DNA from: Pristiophorus japonicus
Taxonomy: Eukaryota
Direction of reading: 5' to 3'
NCBI RefSeq assembly: GCF_044704955.1
Contig: NC_091979.1
Span: 316,572,001-316,636,000, forward strand
Length of the DNA stretch: 64,000 nt
The position numbers were made by a program, and so were the translations under genes. This document shows, piece by piece, positions 17,804-62,900 of this stretch (position 1 is the stretch's first letter; each line of letters opens with the position of its first letter). A model generated the notes under the pieces. The model was not told the DNA's origin and did not search any database. It saw only the letters and a program-made list of their open reading frames with translations.

Positions 17804-18537
17804 CATCACCTATGGAAACTATGCCTGGGTATATTATCACATGGGCCAACTGATAGAGGCCCAGTCCTACCTCAACAAGCTGGAGATGATCTGTAAACAA
17901 TTTACTGATGGCTCTCGGTATAAGCACTGATACCTGAAGTATACGGGGAGAAGGGTTGGTCACTGTTGAGTTCTGCCGCTCAATACTATGAAGAGGCAAA
18001 GGAATGTTTTGAGAAGGCTCTGGAGGAAGATTCTGATGACACTGAATGGAACGTTGGCTATGCGACTGCTCTGTTTTGTCTGGAAGGGTTTTCTGGTACC
18101 CCAGAGAGTGGTGACCGCAGCCAATCAGTGAAGCGGTTACAACGTGTGCTGGAACTTGATCCAGATGACTCTGTAACCATGGTGATGTTGGCTCTAAAAC
18201 TGCAAGAGTTCAATCAAAAGGAGGCAGCACTCAGGAGTTCAATCAAAAGGAGGAAGTTGAACAAGCATTGCAGAAGTCTCCTGATCTTCCATATGTAACT
18301 CGTTATGCAGCAACATTTCTGAGAAGAGAAGATGTGGAAAAAGCTGTGGAGCTGTTGAAGAATGCATTAGAAATGACCCCAAACTCTCCCTTCTTACACC
18401 ACCAAATAGGTCTGTGTTACAGAAAGCGACTACTTCAACTGATCAAATATCCAGGCAGCAGAGACCCTCGCAATCCTGCTTTTCAACAGAAAGCTGAGTT
18501 GATCAATCAATGCAAGTACTATTTTCAAATGGCATTT
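17804..18537 (+). pseudogene. IFIT pseudogene fragment (5'- and 3'-truncated, frameshifted)
   Basis: ITYGNYAWVYYH...YYEEAKECFEKALEE...PYVTRYAA...FLHHQIGLCY. One-nt deletion at about 17921 and an internal duplication/frameshift at about 18205-18255. Ends at a CR1 tail. Confidence 0.9.
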
Positions 18538-21500: not shown

Positions 21501-21842
21501 AGAATGTTCCCAATGTTGGGGAAGTCCAGAACCAGGTGTCACAGTCTAAGGATAAGGGGTAAGCCATTTAGGACCGAGATGAGGAGAAACTTCTTCACCC
21601 AGAGAGTGGTGAACCTGTGGAATTCTCTACCACAGAAAGTTGTTGAGGCCAATTCACTAAATATATTCGAAAAGGAGTTAGATGTAGCCCTTACTATGAG
21701 GGGGATCAAGGGGTATGGCGAGAAAGCAGGAATGGGGTACTGAAGTTGCATGTTCAGCCATGAACTCATTGAATGGCGGTGCAGGCTCGAAGGTCCGAAT
21801 GCCCTACTCACACACCTATTTTCTAGCTTTCTATCTTTCTAT
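18570..21842 (+). mobile_element. Near-full-length CR1 LINE with repeat-containing 5' UTR, ORF1 (zinc finger + SGNH esterase) and internally deleted ORF2
   Basis: ORF1 19586-20534: CFSC/CGKC, IVIGDSIVRG, DGLHL, with stops. ORF2 start LCLNARSI jumps at about 20790 directly to [16 protein letters not shown]. (TTTCTAT)-type tail. Confidence 0.9.
18765..19400 (+). repeat. 77-bp tandem repeat (about 8 units) in the CR1 5' UTR
   Basis: Unit GAGGAGGTACGTGGAGAGGCGGGAGTTCCGGGGATCGGAGAGGCCTACACAAGGCCAGTGAGACCAGGAGCAGCGTC; period 18842 to 18919. Confidence 0.95.
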
Positions 21843-22102
21843 GAATCCCTGGCCCAAGACCGCCCTCAGTGGAGGAAGAGCATCCAGGAGGCCTCGAGTC
21901 TCGTCATCGAGAGCATGCAGAAACCAAGCACAGACAGTGGAAGGAGAGAGCGGCAAACCAGATTCCCTACCCACCCGTTCCTTCAACGACTGTCTGTCCC
22001 ACCTGTGACAGAAACTGTAATTCCCATATTGGACTGGACAGTCACCTGAGAACTCACTTTTGGAGTGGAAGAAAGTCTTCCTCAATTTCGAGGGACTGCC
22101 TA
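21843..22102 (+). mobile_element. RTE LINE 3' end
   Basis: C-terminal C2H2 finger CPTCDRNCNSHIGLDSHLRTH followed by the RTE tail GGAAGAAAGTCTTCCTCAATTTCGAGGGACTGCC. Confidence 0.75.
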
Positions 22103-23870
22103 TAGAAACATAGAAACATAGAAAATAGGTGTAGCAATAGGCCATTCGGCCCTTCGAGCCTGCACCGCCATTCAATGAGTCTCTGTTTTTACCACCAAAG
22201 TGGATAACCTCACATTTATCCACATTATACTTCATCTGCCATGCATTTGCCCACTCACCTAACCTATCCAAGTCACTCTGCAGCCTCATAGCATCCTCCT
22301 CGCAGCTCACACTGCCACCCGACTTAGTGTCATCCACAAATTTGGAGATAGTACATTTAATCCTCTCATCTAAATCATTAATGTGCAATGTAAACAGCTG
22401 GGGCCCCAGCACAGAACCTTGCGGTACCCCACTAGTCACTGCCTGCCATTCTGAAAAGTACCCATTTACTCCTACTCTTTGCTTCCTGTCTGTCAACCAG
22501 TTCTCAATCCACGTCAGCACACTACCCCCAATCCCATGTGCTTTAACTTTGCACACTAATCTCTTAAGTGGGACCTTGTCGAAGACCTTCTGAAAGTCCA
22601 AATATACCACATCAACTGGTTCTCCCTTGTCCACTCTACTGGAAACATCCTCAAAAAATTCCAGAAGATTTGTCAAGCATGATTTCCCTTTCACAAATCC
22701 ATGCTGACTTGGACTTATCATATCACCTCTTTCCAAATGCGCTGCTATGATGTCCTTAATAATTGATTCCATCATTTTACCCACTACCAATGTCAGGCTG
22801 ACCGGTCTATAATTCCCTGTTTTCTCTCTCCCTCCTTTTTTAAAAAGTGGGGTTACATTGGCTACCCTCCACTCCATTGGTAACTGATCCAGAGTCCATG
22901 GAATGTTGGAAATGACTGTCAATGCATCCGCTATTTCCAAGGCACCTCCTTAAGTACTCTGGGATGCAGTCCATCAGGTCCTGGGGATTTATCGGCCTTC
23001 AATCCCATTAATTTCCCCAACACAATTTCCTGACTAGTAAGGATTTCCCTCAGTTCCTCCTTCTTACTGGACCCTCTTATCCCTTTTATATCCGGAAATT
23101 TGTTTGTGTCCTCCTTAGTGAATACTGAACCAAAGTACTTGTTCAATTGGTCTGCCATTTCTTTGTTCCCCGTTATGACTTCCCCTGATTCTGACTGCAG
23201 GGGACCTACATTTGTCTTTACTAACCTTTTTCTCTTTACATATCTGTAGAAGCTTTTGCAGTCGGTCTTAATGTTCCCTGCAAGCTTCCTCTCATACTCT
23301 ATTTTCCCTGCCCTAATCAAACCCTTTGTCCTCCTCTGCTGAGTTCTAAATTTCTCCCAGTCCCCGGGTTCGCTACTATTTCTGGCCAATTTGTATGCCA
23401 CTTCCTTGGCTTTAATACTATCCCTGATTTCCTTTGATAGCCACGGTTAAGCCACCTTCCCTTTTTTATTTTTACGCCAGACAGGGATGTACAATTGTTG
23501 TAGTTCATCCATGCAGTCTCTAAATGTCTGCCATTGCCCATCCACAGTCAACCCTTTAAGTATCATTCGCCAATCTACCGTAGCCAATTCACACCTCATA
23601 CTTTCAAAGTTACCCTTCTTTAAGTTCTGGACCATGGTCTCTGAATTAACTGTTTCATTCTCCATCCTAATGCAGAATTCCACCATATTATGGTCACTCT
23701 TCCCCAAGGGGCCTCGCACAACGAGATTGCTAATTAATCCTCTCTCATTACACAACACCCAGTCTAAGATGGCCTCCCCCCTAGTTGGTTCCTCGACATA
23801 TTGGTATAGAAAACCATCCCTTATGCACTCCAGGAAATCCTCCTCCACCGTATTGCTTCCAGTTTGGTTG
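22103..23870 (-). mobile_element. CR1 LINE ORF2 (endonuclease end to RT, internal deletion) with 3' tail
   Basis: GPLGKSDHN, NYRPVSL, QHGFVKGKSC, FVDDTK; (TTTCTATG)n tail. Confidence 0.92.
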
Positions 23871-28800: not shown

Positions 28801-29375
28801 CTGCTGTACCTTTATTGCACACATCCCTTATTTCTTGTTTGATGCTGTCCCCAACCTCACTGCTATTATTTGGTGGCCTGTACACAACTCCCACTTGCGT
28901 TTTCTGTCCTTTGGTATTCTGTAGCTCCACCCATACAGATTCCACATCATCCAAGCTAATGTCCTTCCTACAATTGCATTAATTTCCTCTTTAACCAGCA
29001 ACGCCATCCCACCTCCTTTTCCTTTCTGTCTATCCTTCCTAAATACTGAATACCCTTGGATGTTGAGTTCCCAGCCTTGATCACCCTGGAGCCGTGTCTC
29101 CATGATGCCAATCACATCGTATACGTTAACAGCTATCTGTGCAGTTAATTCGTCCACCTTATTCCGAATACTCCTCGCATTGTGGCACAGAGCCTTCAGG
29201 CTTGTCTTTTTAACATACTTTGACCCTTTAGAATTCTGTTGTAAAGTGGCCCTTTTTGTTTTTTGCCTTGGGTTTCTCTGCCCTCCACTTTTACTATTCT
29301 CCTTTCTATCTTTTGCTTCTGTCTCCATTTTATTCCCCTCTGTCTCCCTGAATAGATTCCCATCCCCCTGCCATA
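25899..29375 (-). mobile_element. Long CR1 LINE (ORF2 endonuclease-RT-3' tail) interrupted by an opposite-strand CR1
   Basis: LCHNARSIRNK, VGVVYRPP, MGDFN, SDHN and RT motifs; 3' part 25899-26508 and 5' part 27205-29375. Confidence 0.9.
26510..27204 (+). mobile_element. CR1 3' fragment nested in the - strand CR1 (itself carrying a short CR1 tail at about 26630-26720)
   Basis: LGLYSLEFRRMRGDLIE...WNSLP; (TTCTTATG)n tail. Confidence 0.88.
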
Positions 29376-30354
29376 TTAATTTACACACTCTGGTGGCATG
29401 AAACAAACAGAATAAAATACAGTACAACACACAACACTGGCCCATCTGAACAGGCCCCCATCGCAAAGTACCCATGACTAAAACACTCCTGTTTGGCTCA
29501 ATAGGGCACCACTGAATCTGTCCAACAGATTGTACATACGCCTATGATCCATGCAGAAACCTCTCCATTAAATCCCTAAGGCTTGGTTGGGACACACAAC
29601 ACCCCTTCATACCATGCTGTGGTCTTAAGACATGTGTGGGCTGGGATAATGCTCACCAGTTACCCCTCTGGCTTACTCACTGCTTCTCCCGATGAGGGAG
29701 GCTCTCTTTGCTCATAGCTGGTGGTTTCTTCTCTCCGTCCCAGACCGAGTGCTCAGTCCTTGTGTGCGTTGAATGAAACAAGTAAGCTTGGAGGAGGAGA
29801 GCGATGGCTGCAACTGCCGTTTCTCTTATACCTGAAAATACTTCTGAATTCTTCGTGCCAAAATTCAGTCTTTTGCCTGAGGCAGTCCAACTGAAAGAGC
29901 AATGAATCCTGTGTCTTTGTTACTGGGCCATTCTGGGGATAAAGGCTCCAATGAGTCTGGGTGGCCAAATGGCTTCCTTTGTCCTGAGGTTCCTGTGCTC
30001 TGGGGCTCGCCGTCATTTCGATGGCTTGAGCTCTGACCAATTTACTTGGTCTCTCACTGATGACAAAGGGTCCCATCAGCCATCTTCCTGCAATTTTAGC
30101 CATTGACCCATCCCCACCCACCTGATGTGTATTCCTGTGGAACATGTATGGACCTATCCCAAGTCCGCTGTCTGCTCTTCTGCAGTAACAGAAAATATGG
30201 AAAAGCAAAAGTCCAAAATTAAAGTACAAAATGTTTTGAAGTCTGTCGATGTTTCCGCCGATTCTTACAATCAGCAATCTCCAAGTGTGTTGCTAATGGT
30301 TACTCGAAGGATATGCTGCTTTAATGCAACCAGAATTAGTCAAATTTAGAAAAC

Positions 30355-40857: not shown

Positions 40858-41065
40858 CATAGAATTATAGAAATGACTACACAGGAGGAGACCATTCGGC
40901 CTCGGAGCTCGCACTCTCTTCTGTAATCCCATTCCCCCCAGATCTTATAACATTCTTCCTTTTCAAATATTTATCACGTTCCCTTTAGGTTTTAGAATCC
41001 TTGGTTTCTGTTCCATAGTTCCCCATTCGCCCACCACTGGAAATAATCTTTCACTATTTACCCAC
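40858..41065 (-). mobile_element. Old CR1-like 3' fragment
   Basis: CATAGAATTATAGAAAT tail and GGAGACCATTCGGCC 3' UTR motif. Confidence 0.5.
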
Positions 41066-41182: not shown

Positions 41183-41965
41183 CCCCATTCCCCAGTCTCC
41201 CTCTCCCCGAGCCCCCATTCCCCAGTCTCTCTCTCCCCGAGCCCCCATTCCCCAGTCTCTATCTCCCCGAGCCCCCATTCCCAAGTCTCCCAGTCCCCAA
41301 TCCCCCATTCCCCAGTCTCCCTCTCCCAGAGCCCCCATTCCCCAGTCTCCCTCTCTCCCCGAGCCCCCATTCCCCAGTCTCTCTCTCCACGAGGCCCCAT
41401 TCCCAAGTCTCCCTCTCCCCAAGCCCTCATTCCCCAGTCTCCCGCTCCCCGAGCCCCCATTCCCCAGTCTCTCTCTCCCCGAGGCCCCATTCCCAAGTCT
41501 CCCTCTCCCCAAGCCCTCATTCCCCAGTCTCTCTCTCCCCGAGCCCCCATTCCCAAGTCTCCCAGTCCCCAAGCCCCCATTCGCCAGTCTCCCGCTCCCT
41601 GAGCCCCCATTCCCCAGTCACCGTCTCCCTGAACCCCCATTCCCCAGTCTCCCTCTCCCCAAGCTCCCATTCCTCAGTCTCCCACTCTCCCCAAGCCCCC
41701 ATTCCCCAGTCTCCCTCGCCCGGAGCCCCCATTCCCAGTCTCCCTCTTCCCAAGCCCCCATTCCCCAGTCTCTCCCTCTCTCCCCGAGCCCCCATTCCCC
41801 AGTCTCCCTCTCCCCCACCCCCCATTCCCCAGTCTCCCTCTCCACGAGCCCCCATTCCCCAGTCTCCCTCTCCCTGAGCCCCCATTCCCCAGTCTCTCTC
41901 TCCCCAAGCCCCCATTCCCAGTCTCCCTCTCTCCCCCAGCCCCCATTCCCAGTCTCCCTCTCCTC
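41183..41965. repeat. 30-bp minisatellite (CCCCCATTCCCCAGTCTCCCTCTCCCCGAG)n, left array
   Basis: Visible approximately 30-bp period with indel variants. Confidence 0.95.
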
Positions 41966-41976
41966 CGGCCACCATA

Positions 41977-42037
41977 CATAGAATCATAGAATGGTTGCAG
42001 CACGGAAGACGACCATTTGGCCATCCAGCCCGTGCCG
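41977..42037 (-). mobile_element. About 60-bp CR1 extreme 3' end abutting the MHC class I 3' UTR
   Basis: The - strand reads GGCACGGGCTGGATGGCCAAATGGTCGTCTTCCGTGCTGCAACCATTCTATGATTCTATG: CR1 3' stem-loop region plus (ATTCTATG)2 tail. Confidence 0.7.
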
Positions 42038-42288
42038 AATTAGACATATCTCATTTACATTAAACACCAAAAGACCCAACTGGAGATTTCTATCCAATCA
42101 CCAAAAAGAAAATATCCCCAAACCCACTCAATGATAGATACGTTACCGATTACTATTAACACTGGCAGCAGCCAGTGACAATCAAACGAAATGAAGATGC
42201 AGAATCGTGGATTGCTTCTGAATGAACCCTCCTTGCGACACAGCAAGTCCAGATTCTAGTCCCAGTGAACTTCACTTCGGGACCAGCC

Positions 42289-43356
42289 TCAGGCTTGGGC
42301 TGGTGAGTTTGGGGATAATTCTCCTCGTTCAGCAGGGTTCGCTGGGCTGTAACCAGATGTCTCCTCTCCTCCTCTCCTCTTCCACACAACCGCACCGATC
42401 ACAAGAGCAATCAGGGCGACGGCAGCAATCACAATTCCAACAATCAAACCCCTATTTGTTCCCTCTGGCGATCCTGGAGTCACTCGGAACGTCCCGTCCC
42501 AGTCTCGGGTCTTCCCTCCTGCTTGGCCGCTCTGCTCATACTGACAGGAATAGGTGGCTCCATCCGCGGGCTCGATCTGAGCCCATGTCGTGAGCTGGTA
42601 GGTGCCATCGTGGTTGGGCAGGATGCCCGTGGATTCCGTGTCCCTGATTGGCTCGCCATTTCTCAGGAGGGTCACTTGGATTTCGCGAGGGTAAAAACCT
42701 GTGAGGAGACAGGAGAGTTGGGGGGCTTTAATATTCGACGCCTTGTCCACAGAAGGAAACACTTGAGGAGCAACAGCTCCCAGTTCTCTCTCTCCAGCCT
42801 TCAGGTATTTCTTCAGCCACTCGATGCACTCCTGCTCCAGGTAACTTTTGTCCTGCTGCATTTCGGCCCTGTCCTGGTCCCACTTGTTCTTGGTGATCTC
42901 TCCCCACGGTACCGGGGTGACCCACACCAGGCGATCCTTGTCGAAGCTGATCAGGTCCTTCCCGTCCCAGCCGTACTGCCAGAAGCCGCTGGTGGTGCCG
43001 CCATCCCGCAGCTCACAGCCGCACAACCTCTGCAGCGTGTGGATCCCGCCGGTCTGGTTGGTGCGGGTTAAGACGGTCTGAATGTTGCCTTTCATCACCT
43101 GCTCCTTGCCCCGCAGGATCTGTGTGTAGCGCTCCCAGTACTCGGCGCCCTCGCTCTCCCTGATCCACCGCTGCCGCGGGGTGTACTGGCGGCTCACACT
43201 GTCATAGTAAATAAACTGCTGGTCATCCACATAACCCACATCGGTGAACTCAGCAATGCCCGGGAGCGGAGTGATAGCCGTGTGCATGTACCGTAGGGAG
43301 TGAGAGCCTGCACACACCTCTCCACACAGAAGGGCCAGCACGGTCAGTCCAAACAT
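42289..43356 (-). CDS. Intronless MHC class I heavy chain, resembling the shark classical UAA lineage (355 aa)
   Basis: Signal peptide MFGLTVLALLCGEVCA; alpha1 GSHSLRY...EYWER...RTNQT (N86 glycan); alpha2 CGCEL...EITKNKWD...YLEQECIEWLKKY; alpha3 LSCLLTGFYP...PNHDGTYQ...YSC; TM GLIVGIVIAAVALIALVIGAVVW; tail with GYSPA. Single open frame across all normal exon junctions. Confidence 0.95.
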   Translation of the reverse strand: MFGLTVLALLCGEVCAGSHSLRYMHTAITPLPGIAEFTDVGYVDDQQFIYYDSVSRQYTPRQRWIRESEGAEYWERYTQILRGKEQVMKGNIQTVLTRTNQTGGIHTLQRLCGCELRDGGTTSGFWQYGWDGKDLISFDKDRLVWVTPVPWGEITKNKWDQDRAEMQQDKSYLEQECIEWLKKYLKAGERELGAVAPQVFPSVDKASNIKAPQLSCLLTGFYPREIQVTLLRNGEPIRDTESTGILPNHDGTYQLTTWAQIEPADGATYSCQYEQSGQAGGKTRDWDGTFRVTPGSPEGTNRGLIVGIVIAAVALIALVIGAVVWKRRGGEETSGYSPANPAERGELSPNSPAQA

Positions 43357-43452
43357 TGTTACTTCCCTCGACAGGCTGGAATGAGCGGTTTGCAGGCAAT
43401 CCTTTTCCGAGAGACCGTCCGTGAGCTGCGCCCAATTCAGACCGTGTGATTC

Positions 43453-44610
43453 CTGTGCCCTGTGCCGATACTGTGTCTCTGGGACTGTCTCTCTGTGCCC
43501 TGTGCTGATACTGTGTCTCTGGGACTGTCTCTCTGTGCCCAGTGCTGATACTGTGTCTCTGGGACTGTCTCTCTGTGCCCAGTGCTGATACTGTGTCTCT
43601 GGGACTGTCTCTCTGTGCCCAGTGCTGATACTGTGTCTCTGGGACTGTCTCTCTGTGCCCAGTGCTGATACTGTGTCCCTGGGACTGTCTCTCTGTGCCC
43701 TGTGCTGATACTGTGTCTCTGGGACTGTCTCTCTGTGCCCTGTGCTGATACTGTGTCCCTGGGACTGTCTCTCTGTGCCCAGTGCTGATACTGTGTCCCT
43801 GGGACTGTCTCTCTGTGCCCTGTGCTGATACTGTGTCTCTGGGACTGTCTCTCTGTGCCCTGTGCTGATACTGTGTCCCTGGGACTGTTTCTCTGTGCCC
43901 TGTGCCGATACTGTGTCTCTGGGACTGTCTCTCTGTGCCCAGTGCTGATACTGTGTCTCTGGGACTGTCTCTGTGCCCTGTGCTGATACTGTGTCTCTGG
44001 GACTGTCTCTGTGCCCTGTGCTGATACTGTGTCTCTGAGACTGTCTCTCGGTGCCCTGTGCTGATACTGTGTCTCTGGGACTGTCTCTCTGTGCCCAGTG
44101 CTGATACTGTGTCCCTGGGACTGTCTCTCTGTGCCCTGTGCTGATACTGTGTCTCTGGGACTGTCTCTGTGTGCCCTGTGCTGATACTGTGTCTCTGGGA
44201 CTGTCTCTCTGTGCCCTGTGCTGATACTGTGTCTCTGGGACTGTCTCTCTGTGCCCTGTGCTGATACTGTGTCTCTGGGACTGTCTCTCTGTGCCCTATG
44301 CTGATACTGTGTCTCCGGGACTGTCTTGGTGCCCTGTGCTGATACTGTGTCTCTGGGACTGTCTCTGTGCCCTGTGCTGATACTGTGTCTCTGGGACTGT
44401 CTCTCTGTGCCCTGTGCTGATACTGTGTCTCTGGGACTGTCTCGGTGCCCTGTGCTGATACTGTGTCTCTGGGACTGTCTCTGTGCCCTGTGCTGATACT
44501 GTGTCTCTGGGACTGTCTCTCTGTGCCCTGTGCTGATACTGTGTCTCTGGGACTGTCTCGGTGCCCTGTGCTGATACTGTGTCTCTGGGACTGTCTCTGT
44601 GCCCTGTGCT
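43453..44610. repeat. 40/38-bp minisatellite (TGTGCTGATACTGTGTCTCTGGGACTGTCTCTCTGTGCCC)n, about 29 units
   Basis: Visible period; lies between the MHC ATG and the X-Y module. Confidence 0.97.
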
Positions 44611-44796
44611 GTCTGTTCTTGCGCTTTGCCCAGTGCAGAGTGTTTTACACTCAGACTCCTCCGGTTCGATTGGTTCGAGGGTATATTTGTCTCCAATTAC
44701 AATAAAAACAGGCTGTGAGTCAATAGGCTCCGGGTAGAAAAGACACGGGGAGAGTTTGTGTTGGTGCCGAAATAAACTTTCCAAACATTGAACTAT

Positions 44797-44838
44797 CCAA
44801 TCAGACAAATACTGCGAGCTGCATCATCAGTTGCCGGG
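44797..44838 (-). promoter_or_regulatory. MHC enhanceosome X1-X2-Y module (RFX, CREB/ATF and NF-Y sites)
   Basis: The - strand reads CCCGGCAACTGATG ATGCAGCTCGCAGTATTTGT CTGATTGG: X1, overlapping X2-like TGATGCA, a 20-nt spacer and Y box CTGATTGG, oriented toward the class I ORF. Confidence 0.8.
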
Positions 44839-44956: not shown

Positions 44957-45115
44957 GAGGGGTTCAAGGGATCTGCTGCGAGGGGGCTGAAGGGATCTGC
45001 TGGGAGGGGGCTGAATGGATCTGTTCGGAGGGGGCTGAAGGGATCTGCTGGGAGGGGGCTGAAGGGATCGGCTGGGAGGGGGCTGAAGGGATCTGCTGGG
45101 AGGGGGCTGAAGGGA
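44957..45115. repeat. 24-bp tandem repeat (AGGGGGCTGAAGGGATCTGCTGGG)n, about 6-7 units
   Basis: Visible period; produces the GRGLKGSA pseudo-ORF. Confidence 0.9.
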
Positions 45116-45272
45116 GTTGCTGTGGTGTGTGAGAGAAGGCCAGGGCTGGAGAGGCCCAGTGACCTTGTCTGGAGCCCAGGGATCAGTCCAGCTCTTCCAG
45201 GCCCCCACAGAATAAATTACACTCAACCTGGCCTCTTCTACCTCCCGCCTGGCCTCACCATGATCCCCCCTG

Positions 45273-45818
45273 ACCCATTCCCCAGTCTCTCTCTCCCGAG
45301 CCCCCATTCCCCCTCTCCCCGAGCCCCCATTCCCCAGTCTCCATCTCCCCGAGGCCCCATTCCCCAGTCTTCCTCTCCCCGAGCCCCCATTCCCCAATCT
45401 CTTTCTCCCTGAGCCCCCATTCCCCAGTCTCCCTCTCCCCGAGCTCCCATTCCCCAGTCTCCCTCTCCCTGAGCCCCCATTCCCCAGTTTCCCTCTCCCC
45501 AAGCCTTCATTCCCCAGTCTCCCTCTCCCCGAGCCCCCATTCCCCAGTTTCCCTCTCCCCAAGCCCCCATTTCCCAGTCTCCCTCTCCCCGAGCCCCCAT
45601 TCCCCAGTCTCCCTCTCCCCGAGCTCCCATTCCCCAGTCTCCCTCTCCCCAAGCCTCCATTCCCCATTCTCACTCTCCCCAAGCCCCCATTCCCCAGTCT
45701 CCCTCTCCCCGAGCCCCCATTCCCCAGTCTCCCTCTCCCCGAGCCCCCATTCCCCAGTCTCCCTCTCCCCGAGCCCCCATTCCCCAGTCTCCCATTCCCC
45801 GAGCCCTCTTTCCCCAGT
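45273..45818. repeat. 30-bp minisatellite (CCCCCATTCCCCAGTCTCCCTCTCCCCGAG)n, right array; same unit and orientation as 41183-41965
   Basis: Visible period. Confidence 0.95.
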
Positions 45819-46180: not shown

Positions 46181-46464
46181 ATGATCATACTAATGGATGA
46201 TCGTGGATTTCTGCTGGCACTCATGAGCCAATTGTTCATTTGTTGTTGCCTCCAGGACCATTACGGGATTCCAATGGGTTTCCCCCGAACTGAGGGATGC
46301 CAGGCAGTGAGGCTGCAGGGAGGTGTTCCGGGCCCATGTGCACTGACCTGCTCATCTGTTCTGCTATTCTGACTTTACCAGCATTGCTATGTTGATTATA
46401 TATGAGCTAAAAATGTAAGTTAGATACACATAAGATGGGCTTTGATTATTTTGTTCTCTTACAG

Positions 46465-49400
46465 CAACACACTGAATGATTGCTTGAAAGCAAAACTTGG
46501 CCGCTTCAATGTCACTTCACGTGGGGCCCACAGAGAGACAGCATTGACTTGGACGACATGAAGTATAGATTACAAGATTTAATACAGGCTCGTGTGAAAT
46601 ATCAGGCCAGGTCTGACAACCACCTCGCATTTGTAAACTGTCAGCAAGGCAATTCAAAGGGGCAATTCAAAACTTAAAGGAAGCTGAAAAGATTCTGAGG
46701 GAGAACCATGAACATGAATTTGAAAGAAGAAGCATCATCACCTATGGAAACTATGCCTGGGTATATTATCACATGGGCCAACTGACAGAGGCCCAGTCCT
46801 ACCTCGACAAGCTGGAGATGATCTGTAAATAATTTACTGATGGCTCTCAGTATACAGCACTGATACCTGAAGTATACGGGGAGAAGGGTTGGTCACTGTT
46901 GAATTCTCCTTGTCAATACTATGAAGAGGCAAAGGAATGTTTTGAGAAGACTCTGGAGGAAGATCCTGATGACACTGAATGGAACGTTGGCTATGCGACT
47001 GTTTTGTTCCGTCTGGAAGGGTTTTCTGGTACCCCAGAGAGTGGTGACTGCAGCCAATCAGTGAAGCAGTTGTGACGTGTGCTGGAACTTGATCCAGATG
47101 ACTCTGTAGCCATGTTGGCTCTAAAACTACAAGAGTTCAATCAAAAGGTGGAAGAACACGAATTAGTTGAACAAGCATTGCAGAAGTCCCCTGATCTTCC
47201 ATATGTAACTCGTTATGCAGCAAAATTTTACAGAAGAGAAGGAGATGTGGAAAAAGCTGTGGAGCTGTTGAAGAAAGCATTAAAAATTACTCCAAACTCT
47301 ACCTTCATACACCACCAAATAGGTCAGTGTTGCAGAAAAAAAATATTTCAACTGATCAAATATCCAGGCAGCAAAGCCCCTCGCAATCCTGCTTTTCAAC
47401 AGAAAGCTGAGTTGATCAATCAATGCAAGTACTATTTTGAAAAGGCATTTGAGCAGAAGCCATCATTTATTTTTGCACAATTGCAAATCTACAACGCAGA
47501 AGGAGGCCATTTCGGCCCATCGTGTCCACACCGGCCGACAAAGAAACATACGGCCCTCAGTCAGCAGCCCTGAAAGTTACATATAAACGTATGAACAATG
47601 AACAATGGCAGAAAGGTAAAGAGCACCCAGCCCAACCAGTCTGCCCCACACAACTGCGACACCCCTTGCACCGAAACATTCTACACTCCTCCCCAACCGG
47701 AGCCATGTGATCTCCTGGGAAAGGCAAAAAACAGATAAAAACCCAGGTCAATTGGGGAAAAAATATCTCGGAACATTCCTCTCCAACCCATCCAGGTAAT
47801 CGAAACTCGTCCAGGAGATCACCCTGGATATATTCGATTTGCTGCAGTACTTACCATCATAGCTGTGCCTGCCAACAACAGGTTATCCAGTCTAATCCCA
47901 CTTACCAGCTTTAGGTCCATGTAACCCTGCAGATTATGGCACTTCAAGTGTCCATCCAAGCACCTTTTAAATGTGTTGAGGGTTTCTACATCCACCACCC
48001 TTCCAGGCCCTAAGTTCCAGACCCCCACAACCCTCTGCTTGAAAAAGCCACCCCTCAAATCCCCTCTGAACCTTCCACCAACCACCTTAAAACTATGCCC
48101 CCTCATAATTGAACCCACCACCAAGGGAAATAGGTCCTTGCTATCCACTATATCCAGACCCCTCAAAATTTTGGACACCTCAATGAGGTCTCCTCTCAAC
48201 ATCCTCTGTTCCAATGAGAACAAACACAGCCTATCCAATGATGTGGTATATTTGGACTTTCAGAAGGCTTTCGACAAGGTCCCACACAAGAGATTAATGT
48301 GCAAAGTTAAAGCACATGGGATTGGGGGTAGTGTGCTGACGTGGATTGAGAACTGGTTGTCAGACAGGAAGCAAAGAGTAGGAGTAAATGGGTACTTTTC
48401 AGAATGGCAGGCAGTGACTAGTGGGGTACCACAAGGTTCTGTGCTGGGGCCCCAGCTGTTTACATTGTACATTAATGATTTAGATGAGGGGATTAAATGT
48501 AGTATCTCCAAATTTGCGGATGACACTAAGTTGGGTGGCAGTGTGAGCTGCGAGGAGGATGCTATGAGGCTGCAGAGTGACTTGGATAGGTTAGGTGAGT
48601 GGGCAAATGAATGGCAGATGAAGTATAATGTGGATAAATGTGAGGTTATCCACTTTGGTGGTAAAAACAGAGAGACAGACTATTATCTGAATGGTGACAG
48701 ATTAGTAAAAGGGAAGGTGCAACGAGACCTGGGTGTCATGGTACATCAGTCATTGAAGGTTGGCATGCAGGTACAGCAGGCGGTTAAGAAAGCAAATGGC
48801 ATGTTGGCCTTCATAGCGAGGGGATTTGAGTACAGGGGCTGGGAGGTGTTGCTACAGTTGTACAGGGCCTTGGTGAGGCCACACCTGGAGTATTGTGTAC
48901 AGTTTTGGTCTCCTAACTTGAGGAAGGACATTCTTGCTATTGAGAGAGTGCAGCGAAGATTCACCAGACTGATTCCCGGGATGGTGGGACTGACCTATCA
49001 AGAAAGACTGGATCAACTGGGCTTGTATTCACTGGAGTTCAGAAGAATGAGAGGGGACCTCATAGAAACGTTTAAAATTCTGACGGGTTTAGACAGGTTA
49101 GATGCAGGAAGAATGTTCCCAATGTTGGGGAAGTCACAGTCTAAGGATAAGGGGTAAGCCATTTAGGACCGAGATGAGGAGAAACTTCTTCACCCAGAGA
49201 GTGGTGAACCTGTGGAATTCTCTACCACAGAAAGTAGTTGAGGCCAATTCACTAAATATATTCAAAAGGGAGTTAGATGAAGTCCTTACTACTCGGGGGA
49301 TCAAGGGGTATGGCGAGAAAGCAGGAAGGGGGTACTGAAGTTTCATGTTCAGCCATGAACTGATTGAATGATGGTGCAGGCGAGAAGGGCTGAATGGCCT

Positions 49401-51500
49401 GATCCTGCATCTATTTTCTATGTTTCTATGTTTCTATCCTCATAGCTAAGTTTCTCCATTCCAGGCAGCATCCTAGCAAATGTCCTCTGCACCCTCTCTA
49501 TTGCAATCACGTCCTTTCTATAATATGGCGACCAGAACTGCACGCAGTACTCCAGCTGTGGCCTAACCAAAGTATTATACATTTTAAGCATAACCTCCCT
49601 GCTCTTGTATTATGTGCCTCAGCCAAGAAAGGCAACCATTCCGTATGCCTTCTTCACCACCTTATCCACCTGGCCTGCTACTTTCAGGGATCTGTGGACA
49701 AGCACTCCAAGATCCCTTTATTCATCTACACTTTTACCGGTTAATGTGTATACCCTTTCCTTATTAGCCCTCTCAAAGTGCATTACCTCATACTTATCCA
49801 AATTAAATTCCATTTGCCACTGCTCTGCCCACCTGACCATTAGATTGATATCCTCCTGCAGTCCATGACTTTCTGCTTCATTAACGACCACACAGCCAAT
49901 TTTGGTGTCACCTGCAAACTTCTTAATCATACTCCCGATAATCAAATCTAGATCATTGATGTATACCACAAAAAGCAAGGAACCCAGTACTGAGCCCTGC
50001 GGACCCCACTGGAAACATCCTTCCAGTCACAAAAACATCCATTTACCATTACCCTTTGCTTCTTACCGCTGAACCAATTTTGGATCCAACTAGCATGTTG
50101 GCATGGATAGAGGATTGGCTGACGAACAAAAACAGAGAGTCGGGATAAATGGGTCATTTTCTGGTTGGCAAACAGTGACGAGTGGGGTGCCGCAGGGATC
50201 GTTGCTGCGGCCTCAAGTATTTACAATCTATATTAATGACTTGGATGAAGGGACCGAGTGTAATGTAGCCAAGTTTGCTGATGATACAAAGATGGGTGGG
50301 AAAGCAAATAGTGAGGAGGACACAAAAAATCTGCAAAGGGATATAGACAGGCTAAGTGAGTGGGCAAACATTTGGCAGATATAGTATAATGTGGGAAAAT
50401 GTGAGGTTATCCACTTTGGCAGAAAAAATAGAAAAGCAAATTATAATTTAAATGAAAAAAAATTGCAAAGTGCTGCTGTACAGAGGGAACTGGGGGTCCT
50501 TGTGCATGAAACACACAAAGTTAGTATGCAAGTAATCAGGAAGGCAAATGGAATGTTGGCCTTTATTGCAAGGGGGATAGAGTATAAAAGCAGCAAAGTC
50601 CTGCTACAACTGTACAGGATATTGGTGAGGCCAACCTATCGAGTACTGCGTACAATTTTGGCTTCCATATTTAAGAAAGGATATACTTGCATTGGAGGCT
50701 GTTCAGAGAAGGTTCACTTGGTTGATTCCGCAGTTGAGGGGGTTGACTTATGGAGGTAGGTTGAGTAAGTTGGGCCAATACTCATTGGAGTTCAGAAGAA
50801 TGAGAGGTATCTTATCGAAAAATAAGATAATGAGGGGGCTTGACAAGGTGGATGCAGAAAGGATATTTCCACTCATCGGGGAAACTAAAACTAGGGCACA
50901 TAGTCTCAGAATAAGGGGCCACCCATTTAAAACTGAGTTGAGGAGGAATTTCTTCTCTCAGAGGGTTGTAAATCTATGGAATTCTCTGCCCCAGAGCACT
51001 GTGGAGGCTGGGTCATTGAATATATTTAAGGAGGAGATATACAGATTTTTGAGCGATAAGGGAACAAGGAGTTATGGGGAGCGGTCAGGGATGTGGAGCT
51101 GAGTCCATTATCAGATCAGCCTTAATATTAAATGGCGGAGCAGGTTCATGGGGCCAGGTGGCCTACTCCTGCTCCTATTTCTTATGTTCTTATGTTATTA
51201 TGTCCTGATAAACAGCAGGCAGTGTCTTTGCAGATTGGGTTATTTGAACTGCACTAGAAAGGATCTGAATCAAATGCAATCACCAATTTTCTGGAAGGAC
51301 TTACAATTGAACAAGGCACAAAAGGTTGGCAATTGTGTCACGAAAATTTGAGAAAGATTGTATCAAAACAAATTGACAGGAATCCCAGAGACAGCAAGGC
51401 CTTTGGTGTTCCTGGGTTACTGCACCAGCTGGATGGGGAGAAGTGCGAAGCTATTTAATGCTTTGAAAAGGCCTTGGAGTTTGATTATGACAAAAAATAA
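46465..51500 (+). pseudogene. IFIT pseudogene exon 2: 46465-47483 plus C-terminal part about 51203-51500, split by about 3.7 kb of nested CR1
   Basis: Acceptor ttgttctcttacAG (46463-46464); LQCHFTW; frameshifts at about 46500 and 46660; stops TAA 46830 and TGA 47073. Resumes PDKQQ...KGSESNAI...PRDSKAFG...LHQLDGEK..AI*CFEKALE with more stops. Confidence 0.92.
47484..51200. mobile_element. Nested CR1 cluster: - strand CR1 (47484-48238 and 49437-50092) interrupted by a + strand CR1 (48239-49436), followed by another + strand CR1 (50093-51200)
   Basis: RT motifs (DFQKAFDKVPH, GVPQGS, FADDTK) and CR1 tails at each junction. Confidence 0.9.
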
Positions 51501-53470: not shown

Positions 53471-53601
53471 CCCTGGAGTCTGTCTGTATTGAAGGTTAAT
53501 CTCCAGCACACTGCTGTGAGCAACTAGGGAGAACATTCACGGGGACATGAAATAAATGGTGTGTTTTTAACATTTTCTTTGAATCCTTTTGTTTATTAGT
53601 A

Positions 53602-54418
53602 CAGGTACAACGTCTGAACTCCGCTGTTGGCGCTCCTCGCCATCGGCCAATCCTCCGCTCCTCGCCATCGGCCAATCCTCCGCTCCTCACCGCCGGCCAA
53701 TCCTCCACTCCTCACCGCCGGCCAATCCTCCACTCCTCACCGCCGGCCAATCCTCCGCTCCTCACCGCCGGCCAATCCTCCACTCCTCACCGCCGGCCGA
53801 TCCTCCACTCCTCACCACTGGCCAATCCTCCGCTCCTCACCGCCGGCCAATCCTCCACTCCTCACCGCCGGCCAATCCCCCGCTCCTCACCGCCGGCCAA
53901 TCCTCCGCTCCTCACCACCGGCCAATCCTCCGCTCCTCACTGCCGGCCAATCCCCCGCTCCTCACCACCGACCGATCCTCCGCTCCTCACCGCCGGCCGA
54001 TCCTCCGCTCCTCACCGCCGGCCAATCCTCCGCTCCTCACCACCGGCCAATCCCCCGCTCCTCACCACCGGCCAATCCTCCGCTCCTCACCACCGGCCAA
54101 TCCTCCGCTCCTCACCGCCGGCCAATCCTCCGCTCCTCACCGCCGGCCAATCCTCCGCTCCTCACCACCGGCCGATCCTTCTCTCCTCACCACCGGCCGA
54201 TCCTCCGCTCCTCGCTGGCCGCCGATTCTCCGCTCCTCACCGCCGGCCGATCCTTCACTCCTCGCCACCGGCCGATCCCCCGCTCCTCGCTGGCCGCCGA
54301 TTCTCACTGGCCGTGGCCCCCCGGCACTGCCCTCCGTTGCCACCTTGGCCGCTTCAAAACTGTCCAATTTTCGGACAATTCTGGTTTTGGGAATTCTGGA
54401 TTCTGGACGTTGTACCTG
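53602..54418. mobile_element. Tc1/mariner-pogo (Tigger-like) MITE carrying an internal minisatellite
   Basis: TIRs CAGGTACAACGTC (53602) and GACGTTGTACCTG (ending 54418); TA on the left flank (the right flank reads GA). Confidence 0.7.
53630..54310. repeat. 25-bp minisatellite (CCGGCCAATCCTCCGCTCCTCACCG)n, about 27 units
   Basis: Visible period; the 25-aa repeat in the ORFs equals 3 units. Confidence 0.95.
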
Positions 54419-59998: not shown

Positions 59999-62900
59999 TG
60001 TTATGTATGCTTGCTTGTATTGTTTTATGGTGTTTGTAACACTGAATGTACCTTACACTGTACACATCTTACTGTACACCAGAGGGTGCTGCTGCTGGAG
60101 ACCTAAGGGTTACCTACACACTGCAGGTAACCCAGTCTAAAAGGGAGCTCACAGCTTGGTGTCCCAACTCAGGAGCTGCAAATAAAGGACTACAGTGTAC
60201 ACAGTTTAAGTACCATACACTGCCTCGTGGAGTCATTACCAAAGGTGCCTGCATACACTGCAATTGGCGATGAGATCACGAACTACATGCTCAGCATGTC
60301 GAATCTCAGCAACTTTCAGCAATTTACCGATGGGGAAGATTGGGATACTTTTGTAGAAAGATTGGAACATTTCTTCATAGCCAACGACCAGGATGGGGAC
60401 ACACTGGCTACACGACTGAAAGCGCAGGGCCATCCTGCTTAGCAGTTGTGGGCCCACCATCCATTGTCTCGTCAGGGACTTGCTAGCCCCTGTGAAGACA
60501 ACCACCAACAGCTATGAGGAACTTGTAACACTAATACAGGAGCAAGTAAAACCAAAAGAAAGCATCCTCAAAGCCAGGCACCGGTTCTTCACTTACCGGC
60601 GACCCGAAGGCCAGGAAATTACTAAGTATGCTGCACATTTAAGAAGACTAGCTGCACCGTGTGATTTTGGAGACCACCTGAATGAAGCATTAAGGGACAT
60701 ATTTGTCATCGAAATTGGCCACAAGGGCCTCCTACACAAATTGCTCTCTGCGGACATCACAGTCACCCTGCAGAAAGCAATTCAAGTGAGCCAGGCCTAC
60801 ATGGTTTCGGCCGGCGACTCCAGGCGAATACTGACCCAGGACTCTAAACCGGCGAGCGCAGTGCACCGCATGGACACTTCTAAAGGCAGAAATGCTGCCC
60901 GAGTCCCGCAACCCTGGTCCGCCACATGGGGCAAACCGGATGGCCCCGTGCTGACGCTGTGGAGGAAACCACAGGGCCCACCAGTGCCGCTACAAAGACT
61001 AGACATACAAAAGCTGCAAAGAGAAAGGGCACCATCAAAGGATGTGTAGAAAAAGCTTTACTCACTGCGTCACTGAAGAGGAGGCTGATCACCGGGGCTC
61101 CGACACAGATGAAGATGAAGCTGCTCAACCCGTGGAACAAAAGAATGGAGATAATACCTGCTCCACTGAAAGTTCTCTGTGGACGATGGAAATCTACATC
61201 GGTGGGGTCCCAGTTTCCATGGAGATCGACACAGGGCCGAGCCAGTCTGTGATGAGCCAAACGACCTTTGAAAAAATTTGGATGAATCCCACCACTCGAC
61301 CAAAACTGTCTCCTGTCCAGGCACAGCTGCTCACCTACACCAAAGGTAAAATCCAAATCGTTGGCAGCGTGAACGTCCAGGTCTCTCAGGGCGACGTGTT
61401 GAACAAACTCCCCCCTGTGGATCATTGCTGGAGATGGTCCCACACTGCTGGGAAGGAATTGGATGAACCCGGTCCAAATCAGGGGAAGTGGCGACGGCCT
61501 CCAGGCTCCAGCAATCGACATCCCACGCAGCCCCGAACATGGATCCATCGCTGCATCGAGAGATCCCAGCGACCAGTCGACTGCGGGGTGACGACTCCAC
61601 AACACCGTGACAAGATCTCAGGAACCGAAAATCCAACCTTCATCTTCCAGGCCAGGGCAGGACTCCAAGAGGTGGACATCATCGAAAGAAGTGGATTCCC
61701 GACGTCCATGGCCAAACCTGAGGAAGAAAAGATCACCACAGCCGACCTGGAGGAGAGCCAGAAGATAGCTGCCTCACCACGAGGAAAAAAAACTAAAATC
61801 AAAATGGCCGGGACCAGATCATGAGGGGCAGCATTGGAGGAGCGACACGTGACATCGAGCGGCCAATCGGATTTGAAGGCTCCCTTAAAGGAGACCGGTA
61901 ACCAAAAAAATTTAAAGGGGCAGTTTCAACTTAAAGATGACAGGGACTTTAAAGCTAAAAATGCAGTAAAAGGGTGGACGTATGATAATGTAACCATGAA
62001 TTGTGATGCTGGTGTAACTAATGTGAAAAATAAAATGAATGCTTGTGTAAGTAAGTTTAGGAACAAGCTTGTTATGTATGATGATTATGGCAGGGAGTTT
62101 GAAATACCTAATGTAACCATGTCTGGTGAGACCATGATACCAAAAAGTGATGCAAATGCTGTTATTAACAATGTAAAGGCAGTCAATAATATAGACTCAA
62201 CTATGTATGATCAGAGCTAGGGTGTCATGTATACAGGTAGGACACTGTTAAAGCACACAGTGTTCGACAGGGACCATGCAAATGCTAGAGGAATCCCCCC
62301 ATGGGAGACCCCCAGGTCCAGTTGGCTACCAGACCATGTAGCCTGGATCTTTGGAACGAGTGTGATGCCCCAGGAAGGACACACACACACCCAGCACACC
62401 CAGTGGAAGCAGACCCACTACAGGGACAGTGGTCAATGGGCAACACAGCCACCACCACTGGCAACCTGCCCCAGACCAGCCCTACACCTCCTGGCCACGA
62501 GGGCCAACACCAGGAGCGAGAGGCCAATACCCTCCAGCTTTCCTGGCAAACCCTGGGATGACCAGACTCTCATCCCAATTGGAGGACAAGGAGCCCACAC
62601 AGTCCTGTGGTCCTGCCCACCACCACACAACTACCCATATCTCAGAATATGCACCCTACCCACTGCTGCAATGACTACCCCACTGAGGGATCCCACAACA
62701 GTGACACCCACATGGTCTGTGTGAGGGATGGGGGGGAAATATATGAGGCCAGCCTTAAGAACAGGGATCACACCTGGCACCCACACAACCCTCACTACAC
62801 CTAGCACCCACACAACCCTCACCACAACCTCCCATAACCCACTACCGATCACTTCCCCAGGTCATTACAATAAGGACTTGAAAAATGCTTAGGGGGGAGT

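What the first reader, a model, noticed from the sequence alone, without database searches (positions are those of the whole stretch)
42289..43356. Intact single-exon, classical-type MHC class I gene
Seen: a 355-aa ORF running through leader, alpha1, alpha2, alpha3, TM and cytoplasmic tail without introns, stops or frameshifts, among heavily decayed neighbours; alpha1-2 is CpG-rich. By eye, 8 of 9 peptide-terminus anchors are kept (Y7, Y59, R84, T143, K146, W147, Y159, Y171; position 123 is L), plus both disulfides and the N86 glycan. Known: class I genes normally encode each domain on a separate exon. Inference: a potentially functional peptide-presenting retrogene or intron-lost gene.
Basis: partly seen in the sequence, partly recalled or inferred. 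Interest (0 to 1): 0.9.

Follow-up and report, generated by a model that had tools for sequence, protein, structure and literature searches.

The report
Intronless shark MHC class I gene
A Japanese sawshark carries an intact, apparently transcribed MHC class I gene whose whole protein is encoded on one exon; it is one of at least six near-identical copies and sits among interferon-induced IFIT genes, an unusual place and gene structure for an antigen-presenting gene.

Summary
Window 42289-43356 (minus strand) is an uninterrupted 355-codon MHC class I heavy chain: leader, alpha1, alpha2, alpha3, transmembrane segment and tail. Every peptide-terminus anchor, both disulfides and the N86 glycan site are kept. 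The genome is Pristiophorus japonicus.

- **Copies:** The gene is one of at least six distinct proteins that are 99% or more identical. The nearest other sawshark class I protein is only 73% identical, so this is not a fresh copy of a known allele.
- **DNA support:** DNA-run contigs cross the leader/alpha1, alpha1/alpha2 and alpha2/alpha3 junctions without a break. This argues against cDNA contamination or a near-identical spliced parent.
- **Expression:** Two transcriptome-like runs hold exact contigs. One carries two alleles private to this copy.
- **Gene structure:** It is not a single-exon gene. Paralogue models and intact splice signals in the window show noncoding exons about 3 kb upstream.
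- **Setting:** The gene lies head-to-head with a broken IFIT gene in an IFIT cluster.
- **Origin:** No poly(A) tract or target-site duplication survives, and an MHC-type X-Y promoter box lies upstream.

Best reading: an old, cDNA-derived class I gene, later amplified as DNA, probably a nonclassical peptide binder. The precedent is the teleost L lineage. The scan noted this class I/IFIT module before, here and 2.5 Mb away.

The parts
42289..43356 (-). Complete class I coding sequence on one exon. Leader 43309-43356, alpha1 43048-43308, alpha2 42772-43047, alpha3 42496-42771, connecting peptide/TM/cytoplasmic tail 42292-42495, stop 42289-42291.
   Evidence: Domain limits are set by homology to 6lup and canonical class I exon borders (inference).
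41976..42288 (-). 3' UTR. 42037-42288 is unique sequence; 41976-42036 is the head of a very abundant shark repeat. No poly(A) tract, canonical poly(A) signal or target-site duplication.
   Evidence: X5 exact contig 41980-42539, and repeat depth of about 160,000 in X1.
43357..43425 (-). 5' UTR part of the coding exon, with two splice acceptors: GCGCAG|CTCACGG at 43426/43425 and TTCCAG|CCTG at 43376/43375.
   Evidence: N-terminal extensions of paralogue models P0001/P0122 and P0124 map here. The X6 exact contig stops at 43426, while the DNA contig runs on.
43453..44611 (.). 40-bp satellite of 29 units, inside the 5' intron, between the X-Y box and the ATG.
44797..44834 (-). MHC-type X1-X2-Y promoter box: GCAACTGATG, 20 nt, CTGATTGG. 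It lies on the gene strand, 1.44 kb upstream of the ATG, or about 284 nt if the satellite is removed.
   Evidence: 1 match; 0 of 100 shuffles. The comparison with the HLA-DRA X-Y spacing is from memory.
46193..46261 (-). Upstream noncoding exon '1b', with donor TA|GTATGA at 46193/46192. It encodes the 23-residue extension of paralogue P0124 (22 of 23 identical).
46379..46384 (-). 3' end of upstream exon '1a': ATGCTG followed by donor GTAAAG. It supplies the 'ML' of paralogue models P0001/P0122. The start of this exon is not defined.
46464..47489 (+). IFIT pseudogene exon 2, head-to-head with the class I gene. It has a frameshift between 46653 and 46662, is cut at IFIT residue 329, and its tail lies at 51204-51491 beyond a reverse-transcriptase insertion.
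41183..41975 (.). 30-bp satellite flanking the 3' side. The same satellite, in the same orientation, recurs at 45275-45818 on the 5' side.

Best explanation
This is a real, transcribed MHC class I heavy-chain gene of Pristiophorus japonicus. Its coding introns were all removed through an mRNA/cDNA intermediate, either by retroposition or by conversion of a genomic copy with its own cDNA. The event is old. The lineage is as far from the nearest sawshark class I (73%) as that gene is from its Squalus and Heptranchias counterparts.

The intronless gene lies in an IFIT cluster. It was later multiplied at the DNA level, as a unit of at least 4.4 kb that includes the upstream noncoding exons, into at least six copies that are 99% or more identical.

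Transcripts start about 3 kb upstream, antisense to the 5' end of a broken IFIT gene. They are spliced over a repeat-filled intron onto the single coding exon.

The product is a full-length membrane class I chain. It keeps the beta2-microglobulin-type alpha3 domain and every residue that clamps peptide N- and C-termini. The most likely function is therefore peptide binding as a low-expressed, oligomorphic, nonclassical (class Ib) molecule.

Shown: the ORF, the fold, the anchors, the multiple copies, the lack of introns in DNA contigs, the splice sites and the IFIT context. Inferred: that the transcriptome-like runs are RNA, the route of intron loss, peptide binding and the class Ib status.
For: - **ORF, domains and fold:**
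- **Anchors:** all anchors, cysteines and N86 are kept in all six copies.
- **Species and copies:** species identity and six distinct proteins at 99% or more, the window's own among them.
- **No close parent:** the nearest other P. japonicus protein is 73% identical. Domain identities are alpha1 64%, alpha2 72%, alpha3 84%, tail 74%, similar to the P0004-Squalus distance.
- **Phylogeny:** the family is monophyletic (100/100) with a stem of 0.24, inside a squalomorph clade with P0004 and Squalus Q8HWH7.
- **Constraint:** only 4 of 66 near-invariant columns are changed, one of them private to this copy. Other annotated shark class I genes range from 0 to 9.
- **DNA contigs:** X1 records 6, 7 and 8 cross the alpha2/alpha3, alpha1/alpha2 and leader/alpha1 junctions unbroken.
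- **Transcript-like contigs:** X5 has exact contigs 41980-42539, 42526-42840 and 42832-43117 at depth 35-50. They carry the window-private 43001C and 42073G, whereas the DNA majority has T and A. X6 has exact contigs 42093-42270 and 43235-43426.
- **Upstream exons:** paralogue N-terminal extensions map to 46261-46193 and 46384-46379, with GT donors and matching AG acceptors.
- **Promoter box:** X-Y box.
- **IFIT neighbours:**
Against: - No poly(A) tract, poly(A) signal or target-site duplication.
- The X-Y box upstream is not expected for a plain retrocopy.
- The runs taken as RNA are of unrecorded kind, and contigs give no strand. Part of the signal could be IFIT-locus or antisense transcription.
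- Depth is about a thousand-fold below the dominant class I paralogue in the same run.
- The six copies are too alike to show selection since amplification. An intact ORF in each is also what a young dead family would show.
- The conserved tail motif GESSSNSSAQA is changed to GELSPNSPAQA.
dN/dS and the limits of the duplicated unit are therefore untested.
Confidence: 0.6

Rival explanations
1. A young, transcribed but functionless processed-copy family. The ORFs are intact only because the copies are too recent to have decayed, and the RNA is locus noise from the IFIT region.
For: The copies differ by under 1%. Depth is low relative to the main class I. Conserved tail serines are changed and four near-invariant columns are altered. 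The surroundings are repeat-rich with broken IFIT copies.
Against: The lineage's own branch is about 0.24 substitutions per site with no stop or frameshift and with all anchors and cysteines kept. That needs long purifying selection, unless all of it predates the intron loss. No near-identical spliced parent is seen in the proteins or in the DNA contigs. Spliced 5' exons with GT-AG signals lie on the gene's own strand.
Confidence: 0.27
2. It is the sawshark's classical (class Ia) peptide-presenting locus, which happens to have lost its introns.
For: The full set of peptide-terminus anchors, the N86 glycan, the disulfides and a standard TM and tail are present. It sits in the same clade as the most classical-looking squalomorph sequences.
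Against: There are at least six nearly identical copies rather than one polymorphic locus. In run X5 a paralogue is hundreds to thousands of times deeper. The neighbours are IFIT genes and transposons, with no antigen-processing genes in 64 kb. In surveyed elasmobranchs class Ia is tightly linked to TAP and PSMB genes (PMC10751288).
Confidence: 0.05
3. Assembly artefact or cDNA contamination.
For: An intronless class I sequence is what a contaminating cDNA would look like.
Against: The sequence is embedded in genomic repeats, with a 5' intron and upstream exons. Contigs of a separate DNA-type run cover the ORF and both flanks evenly and without breaks at the domain junctions. Six distinct annotated copies exist. 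A second class I/IFIT module was noted 2.5 Mb away (unchecked note).
Confidence: 0.02

Closest known systems
Teleost MHC class I L lineage 'processed genes' (Dijkstra et al. 2007; Grimholt et al. 2015, PMC4364491)
   Same: These are expressed class I genes that lack the introns between alpha1, alpha2 and alpha3. This is ascribed to retroposition of (partly) spliced mRNA. They are multicopy and nonclassical.
   Different: L-lineage molecules lack the peptide-terminus anchors and are thought to bind non-peptide ligands or none. The sawshark family keeps all anchors, has also lost the leader and TM/tail introns, belongs to the shark UAA-like clade, and lies in an IFIT cluster.
Shark classical class I UAA (nurse shark Gici-UAA, PDB 6lup; Squalus acanthias Q8HWH7)
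   Same: 55-72% identical, with the same fold (TM 0.94), the same anchors, the same extra Cys next to C101, and the same tail architecture.
   Different: UAA is a single polymorphic, intron-bearing locus tightly linked to TAP and PSMB genes (established knowledge; PMC10751288). This family is intronless, multicopy, weakly expressed and IFIT-linked.
Shark multicopy nonclassical UBA family (UAA-derived; Bartl 1997; PMC12562908, PMC10751288)
   Same: An expanded, UAA-derived class Ib family.
   Different: UBA clusters map inside the MHC between c4 and rxrb. The sawshark family does not group with Hefr O19480 or with the nurse shark nonclassical sequence Q8WLW4. No intronless UBA gene was found in the papers searched.
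Functional retrogenes that recruit distant promoters through new 5' UTR exons and introns (general retrogene literature, e.g. PMC5470649)
   Same: An intronless coding exon preceded by noncoding exons several kb upstream, borrowed from a neighbouring gene's region.
   Different: No poly(A) tract or target-site duplication is left, and an MHC-type X-Y box lies in the 5' intron. A plain mRNA copy would not carry such a box.

Membership tests
MHC class I heavy chain | alpha1-alpha2 peptide-binding superdomain plus a C1-set alpha3 domain | tested here: met
   Pfam MHC_I 3.5e-52 over the full model and C1-set 1.1e-14. PDB 6lup 3.1e-93. Model TM 0.94 to 6lup.
MHC class I heavy chain | Disulfides C101-C164 and C203-C259, and the N86 glycosylation site | tested here: met
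Peptide-binding (classical-type groove) class I | Conserved residues binding the peptide termini: Y7, Y59, R/Y84, T143, K146, W147, Y159, Y171 | tested here: met
   All eight are present in all six copies. Position 123 is L, as in the Squalus and Heptranchias relatives. Their role in the P1 hydrogen-bond network is described in PMC8236899.
Classical class Ia locus | High allelic polymorphism at a single or few loci | not testable with these tools
   Only one genome was available. Its six copies differ at about nine residues in all, which speaks against this feature but is not a population sample.
Classical class Ia locus | Dominant, broad expression | tested here: inconclusive
   Exact contigs have depth 35-50 in X5 and about 7 in X6, against 20,000-125,000 for paralogue contigs. 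The run kind and tissues are not on record.
Classical class Ia locus | Tight linkage to TAP, PSMB and other MHC genes | tested here: not met
   The 64 kb holds three IFIT copies and transposon ORFs only. Wider linkage was not tested.
Processed gene / retrogene | Absence of all parental introns in the coding region | tested here: met
   The ORF is contiguous across all domain borders in the assembly and in the DNA-run contigs. That relatives have one exon per domain is established knowledge; unchecked scan notes s1-874480 and s1-874511 point the same way. It was not verified here.
Processed gene / retrogene | 3' poly(A) tract and flanking target-site duplication | tested here: not met
   No A-run, no poly(A) signal and no shared flank word of 8 nt or more.
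Processed gene / retrogene | Location away from the parent and without the parental promoter | tested here: inconclusive
   The IFIT-cluster location fits. However, an MHC-type X-Y box lies 1.44 kb upstream on the gene strand.
Transposon-captured gene (Harbinger/MITE-type, as noted elsewhere in this genome) | Terminal inverted repeats bounding the captured segment | tested here: not met
   No inverted repeats of 30 nt or more in 34-54 kb, and only two weak 15-18 nt pairs in 40-47 kb.

The most novel reading that the evidence does not exclude
A processed, MHC-unlinked class I family with a fully peptide-competent groove has been wired into, and co-amplified with, an interferon-induced IFIT cluster. 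This would give sawsharks an interferon-driven, retrogene-based antigen-presentation module outside the MHC. It would be an exception to the rule that all elasmobranch class I genes lie in the MHC.
Probability: 0.2. Interest if true: 0.75.

Novelty: new variant of a known kind. Interest (0 to 1): 0.55.

Why it matters
Class I genes almost always keep one exon per domain. The known exception, the teleost L lineage, has lost the peptide anchors. Here a cartilaginous fish has an intronless class I family that keeps a complete peptide-binding signature. It seems to be transcribed and lies among IFIT genes rather than with TAP and PSMB genes. A 2023 survey found every elasmobranch class I gene inside the MHC (PMC10751288). 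If the protein is made and binds peptide, this shows that reverse transcription can seed new antigen-presenting loci outside the MHC early in jawed-vertebrate history. It also offers a simple one-exon system for expression and structural work. If the family is dead, it is still a dated marker of retro-duplication and IFIT-cluster expansion in squalomorph sharks.

Tried and rejected
- **Paralogue and relative loci:** I could not compute dN/dS, could not define the ends of the duplicated unit, and could not check directly that relatives have introns.
- **Transposon capture** (lead from scan notes s1-874478 and s1-874499): I found no terminal inverted repeats, and no homology between the sequences just outside the two satellite blocks. 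I rejected it for this copy.
- **Retrogene hallmarks:** I found no poly(A) tract, poly(A) signal or target-site duplication.
- **IFIT exon 1 and promoter:** I searched for them to decide whether the class I gene lies inside an IFIT intron. The upstream region of the intact IFIT copy has no match elsewhere in the window. The only strict ISRE is at 19445. This remains undecided.
- **Literature:** searches for intronless or processed class I genes in sharks found nothing on this. The papers of Almeida et al. 2020 and 2021 were not held. I therefore could not settle the assignment to a named shark lineage (UAA/UBA/UCA/UDA/UEA).
- **Branch order:** the AU test could not order the family, P0004 and Squalus (p 0.42).
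- **Copy number:** I did not use contig depth as a copy number, as the tool warns against it.

Full report
**What is there**

Window 42289-43356 on the minus strand is a 355-codon ORF from ATG to stop. It matches Pfam MHC_I over the whole model (3.5e-52) and C1-set (1.1e-14). Its best solved relative is the nurse shark classical class I chain 6lup (3.1e-93, residues 17-277). An AlphaFold2 model built on 46 relatives has mean pLDDT 83. Only the signal peptide, the connecting peptide and the tail are low. The model superposes on 6lup with TM 0.94.

Leader, alpha1, alpha2, alpha3, connecting peptide, transmembrane helix and cytoplasmic tail follow each other without interruption. In an alignment with 6lup and the closest shark sequences the following are all present: Y7, Y59, R84, N86, T143, K146, W147, Y159, Y171 and the two disulfide pairs. 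Position 123 is L, as in the Squalus and Heptranchias relatives. CpG observed/expected is 0.75 in alpha1 and 0.56 in alpha2, against 0.44 for the window.

It is the only class I sequence in the 64 kb. The 'decayed neighbours' are transposon ORFs and broken IFIT copies.

**Whose gene, and how many**

The protein search identifies the genome as Pristiophorus japonicus (Japanese sawshark). The ORF's exact product is already in public protein collections. It belongs to a 90% cluster of six distinct P. japonicus proteins, all 99% or more identical, named 'class I histocompatibility antigen, F10 alpha chain-like'. The six differ at about nine residues in total. The window copy has one private change, D119G (43001 C on the plus strand).

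The next closest P. japonicus protein, P0004, is 73% identical: alpha1 64%, alpha2 72%, alpha3 84%, TM and tail 74%. Squalus acanthias Q8HWH7 is 72% identical and a Heptranchias protein 68%. These distances equal those among P0004, Squalus and Heptranchias themselves.

In maximum-likelihood trees the six copies form a 100%-supported group on a stem of 0.24-0.26 substitutions per site. That group sits inside a squalomorph clade with P0004 and Squalus. The order of the three is unresolved (AU p 0.42).

**Is the lack of introns real?**

I laid the contigs of four public runs on 41976-43436. In X1 (kind guessed as DNA, 3.8 Gb of contigs, possibly the assembly's own sample) single contigs run through:
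- the alpha2/alpha3 border (record 6, 42536-43020);
- the alpha1/alpha2 border (record 7, 42991-43165);
- the leader/alpha1 border and on into the 5' flank (record 8, 43136 to beyond 43436).

Their depth is even at about 195. A near-identical intron-bearing copy would have split these contigs at the borders. Together with the genomic embedding described below, this excludes cDNA contamination. It also argues that all copies sharing these words are intronless at those three borders. That relatives have one exon per domain is textbook knowledge. Unchecked scan notes report intron-bearing class I genes elsewhere in this genome.

**Expression**

Runs X5 and X6 are of unrecorded kind. They have the make-up of transcriptomes: 136-164 Mb of contigs, with depths from under 10 to over 100,000 among class I-like contigs.
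- X5 holds exact contigs 41980-42539 (depth 50), 42526-42840 (36) and 42832-43117 (35.5).
- These carry the window-private alleles 43001C and 42073G. The DNA-run contigs show only T and A at those places.
- This copy therefore appears to be the one transcribed in that sample.
- X6 holds exact contigs for 42093-42270 and 43235-43426 (depth about 7).
- Paralogue contigs that are 90-99% alike reach depths of 20,000-125,000 in X5, so this family is a minor class I transcript.

Contigs give no strand, and the RNA nature of these runs is my inference.

**Gene structure upstream**

Three of the six paralogue models carry N-terminal extensions. The extension of P0001 and P0122 (MLLTDG...SREVT) is the in-frame reading of the window's 5' flank from 43425 down to the ATG. 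It is preceded by 'ML'. The extension of P0124 shares only LSREVT with the window.
- The first 23 residues of P0124 are encoded, 22 of 23 identical, at 46261-46193 on the gene strand. They end in TA|GTATGA. The acceptor TTCCAG|CCTG at 43376/43375 completes the Tyr codon exactly.
- ATGCTG|GTAAAG at 46384-46377 supplies 'ML' and joins the acceptor GCGCAG|CTCACGG at 43426/43425.
- The X6 exact contig ends at 43426. That is the last base shared by the spliced and unspliced forms. The DNA contig continues past it.

The gene is therefore not single-exon. It has alternative noncoding first exons about 3 kb upstream, a repeat-filled intron, and one exon with the whole coding sequence. Because paralogues share these exons, the copies arose by DNA-level duplication of a unit of at least 4.4 kb, not by repeated retroposition.

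**The intron and flanks**

Going upstream from the ATG, the intron holds:
- a 40-bp satellite (43453-44611);
- 350 bp of unique sequence;
- a 24-bp repeat (44959-45122);
- a 30-bp satellite (45275-45818), which recurs on the 3' side of the gene (41183-41975).

In the unique stretch, on the gene strand, lies GCAACTGATG-20 nt-CTGATTGG (44797-44834). This is an RFX-type X1 half-site with GATG, a CRE-like TGATGCA, and a Y box. The spacing is the one I recall for HLA-DRA. The pattern occurs once in the window and in none of 100 shuffles. I wrote the pattern after seeing the site, so the shuffle count overstates the significance, but a chance origin is still unlikely.

Such an S-X-Y-type module is peculiar to MHC and a few related genes. 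Its presence suggests that the intronless gene kept, or moved together with, a native promoter. On the 3' side there is no poly(A) tract, no poly(A) signal and no target-site duplication. No inverted repeats bound the region.

**Neighbourhood**

- ORF 2211-3614 (plus strand) is an intact IFIT gene body (IFIT5 2.5e-99).
- IFIT fragments in three frames lie at 17805-18537.
- An IFIT exon 2 with a frameshift runs from 46464 to 47489. Its tail is displaced to 51204-51491 by a reverse-transcriptase insertion.
- The class I first exons lie antisense just upstream of that IFIT exon 2, so the two genes are head-to-head or nested.
- No antigen-processing or other MHC gene is in the window.
- The scan had already noted this class I/IFIT arrangement on this stretch (s1-874856), and a second such module 2.48 Mb further along the same piece (s1-874857). 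The second note is unchecked, but it fits the DNA-level duplication inferred here.

**How it most likely arose and works**

Losing five or more introns precisely is best explained by a reverse-transcribed mRNA. This could be classical retroposition into the IFIT cluster followed by recruitment of upstream exons. It could also be conversion of a genomic copy by its cDNA, followed by DNA transposition with its promoter.
- For retroposition: the non-MHC location and the borrowed 5' exons.
- For conversion: the X-Y box and the missing retroposition marks.

I cannot separate the two.

The lineage's own branch (0.24 per site) carries no stop or frameshift. Only 4 of 66 near-invariant columns are changed (F24M, P35A, S347L, and the private D119G). 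This is within the 0-9 range of other annotated shark class I genes. That implies long purifying selection, although part of the branch may predate the intron loss. The copies themselves are too alike to test selection.

With all peptide-terminus anchors kept, the likeliest product is a beta2-microglobulin-associated, peptide-binding class I molecule. Copy number, low relative expression, the altered tail serines (GESSSNSSAQA to GELSPNSPAQA) and the location make it nonclassical rather than classical. Interferon control through the IFIT locus is an attractive but untested idea.

**Comparison with what is known**

The closest precedent is the teleost L lineage. Most trout genes of that lineage lack the introns between alpha1, alpha2 and alpha3. 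This is ascribed to retroposition of partly spliced mRNA, but the molecules lack the peptide anchors (PMC4364491). A processed class II DAB pseudogene is known in the wallaby (PMC3179965). For elasmobranchs, a 2023 survey found all class Ia and Ib genes inside the MHC (PMC10751288). No squalomorph term turned up in a text search of that paper. I found no paper on intronless shark class I genes or on the P. japonicus MHC. The proteins themselves are already annotated, so the sequence is not new. The gene structure, the IFIT setting and the retained anchors are.

**Verdict**

Interest is moderate to good (0.55).

Noticed in passing
window 2211-3614 (+): Intact 467-residue IFIT gene body (IFIT5 2.5e-99, IFIT1 4.7e-96). 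Its exon 2 acceptor is at about 2185 (TTCTTACAG|TGACAC). Exon 1 and the promoter were not located.
   Followed up: partly
window 17805-18537 (+) and 46464-47489 / 51204-51491 (+): Two decayed IFIT copies. One is spread over three reading frames. The other has a frameshift and is split by a reverse-transcriptase-bearing insertion (ORF 47973-49157). The window is therefore an IFIT cluster in birth-and-death turnover.
   Followed up: partly
window 43453-44611; 41183-41975 and 45275-45818; 44959-45122; 53558-53982: Four different minisatellites with periods of 40, 30, 24 and 25 bp within 13 kb. The 30-bp one brackets the class I gene on both sides in the same orientation. It is unclear whether it marks an insertion into a satellite or is part of the duplicated unit.
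   Followed up: partly
window 41976-42036 and 40858-40910: Heads of a very abundant shark interspersed repeat (CATAGAAT[CT]ATAGAA...CCATT[CT]GGCC). Summed contig depth is about 160,000 in the DNA-type run. The class I 3' UTR contig in X5 reads into it.
   Followed up: no
Read-laying run X7 (organism B, 2021) on 42310-42458 and 42747-43049: A run labelled as a different organism holds contigs 99.3% identical to this gene. This is either a congener that keeps the family or a labelling difference. It would help date the family.
   Followed up: no
proteins P0007 and P0008 (Heptranchias perlo, 612-kb contig): The closest Heptranchias class I proteins also stand for 6-7 near-identical sequences each on one unplaced contig. 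This suggests multicopy UAA-like genes in another squalomorph. Their exon structure could not be checked.
   Followed up: no
window 12047-13422 (+), 21831-22940 (-), 28828-29475 (-), 61042-61824 (+): Retroelement ORFs: aspartyl protease plus reverse transcriptase, LINE-type reverse transcriptase, and an endonuclease fragment. Sources of reverse transcriptase are therefore plentiful in the region.
   Followed up: no
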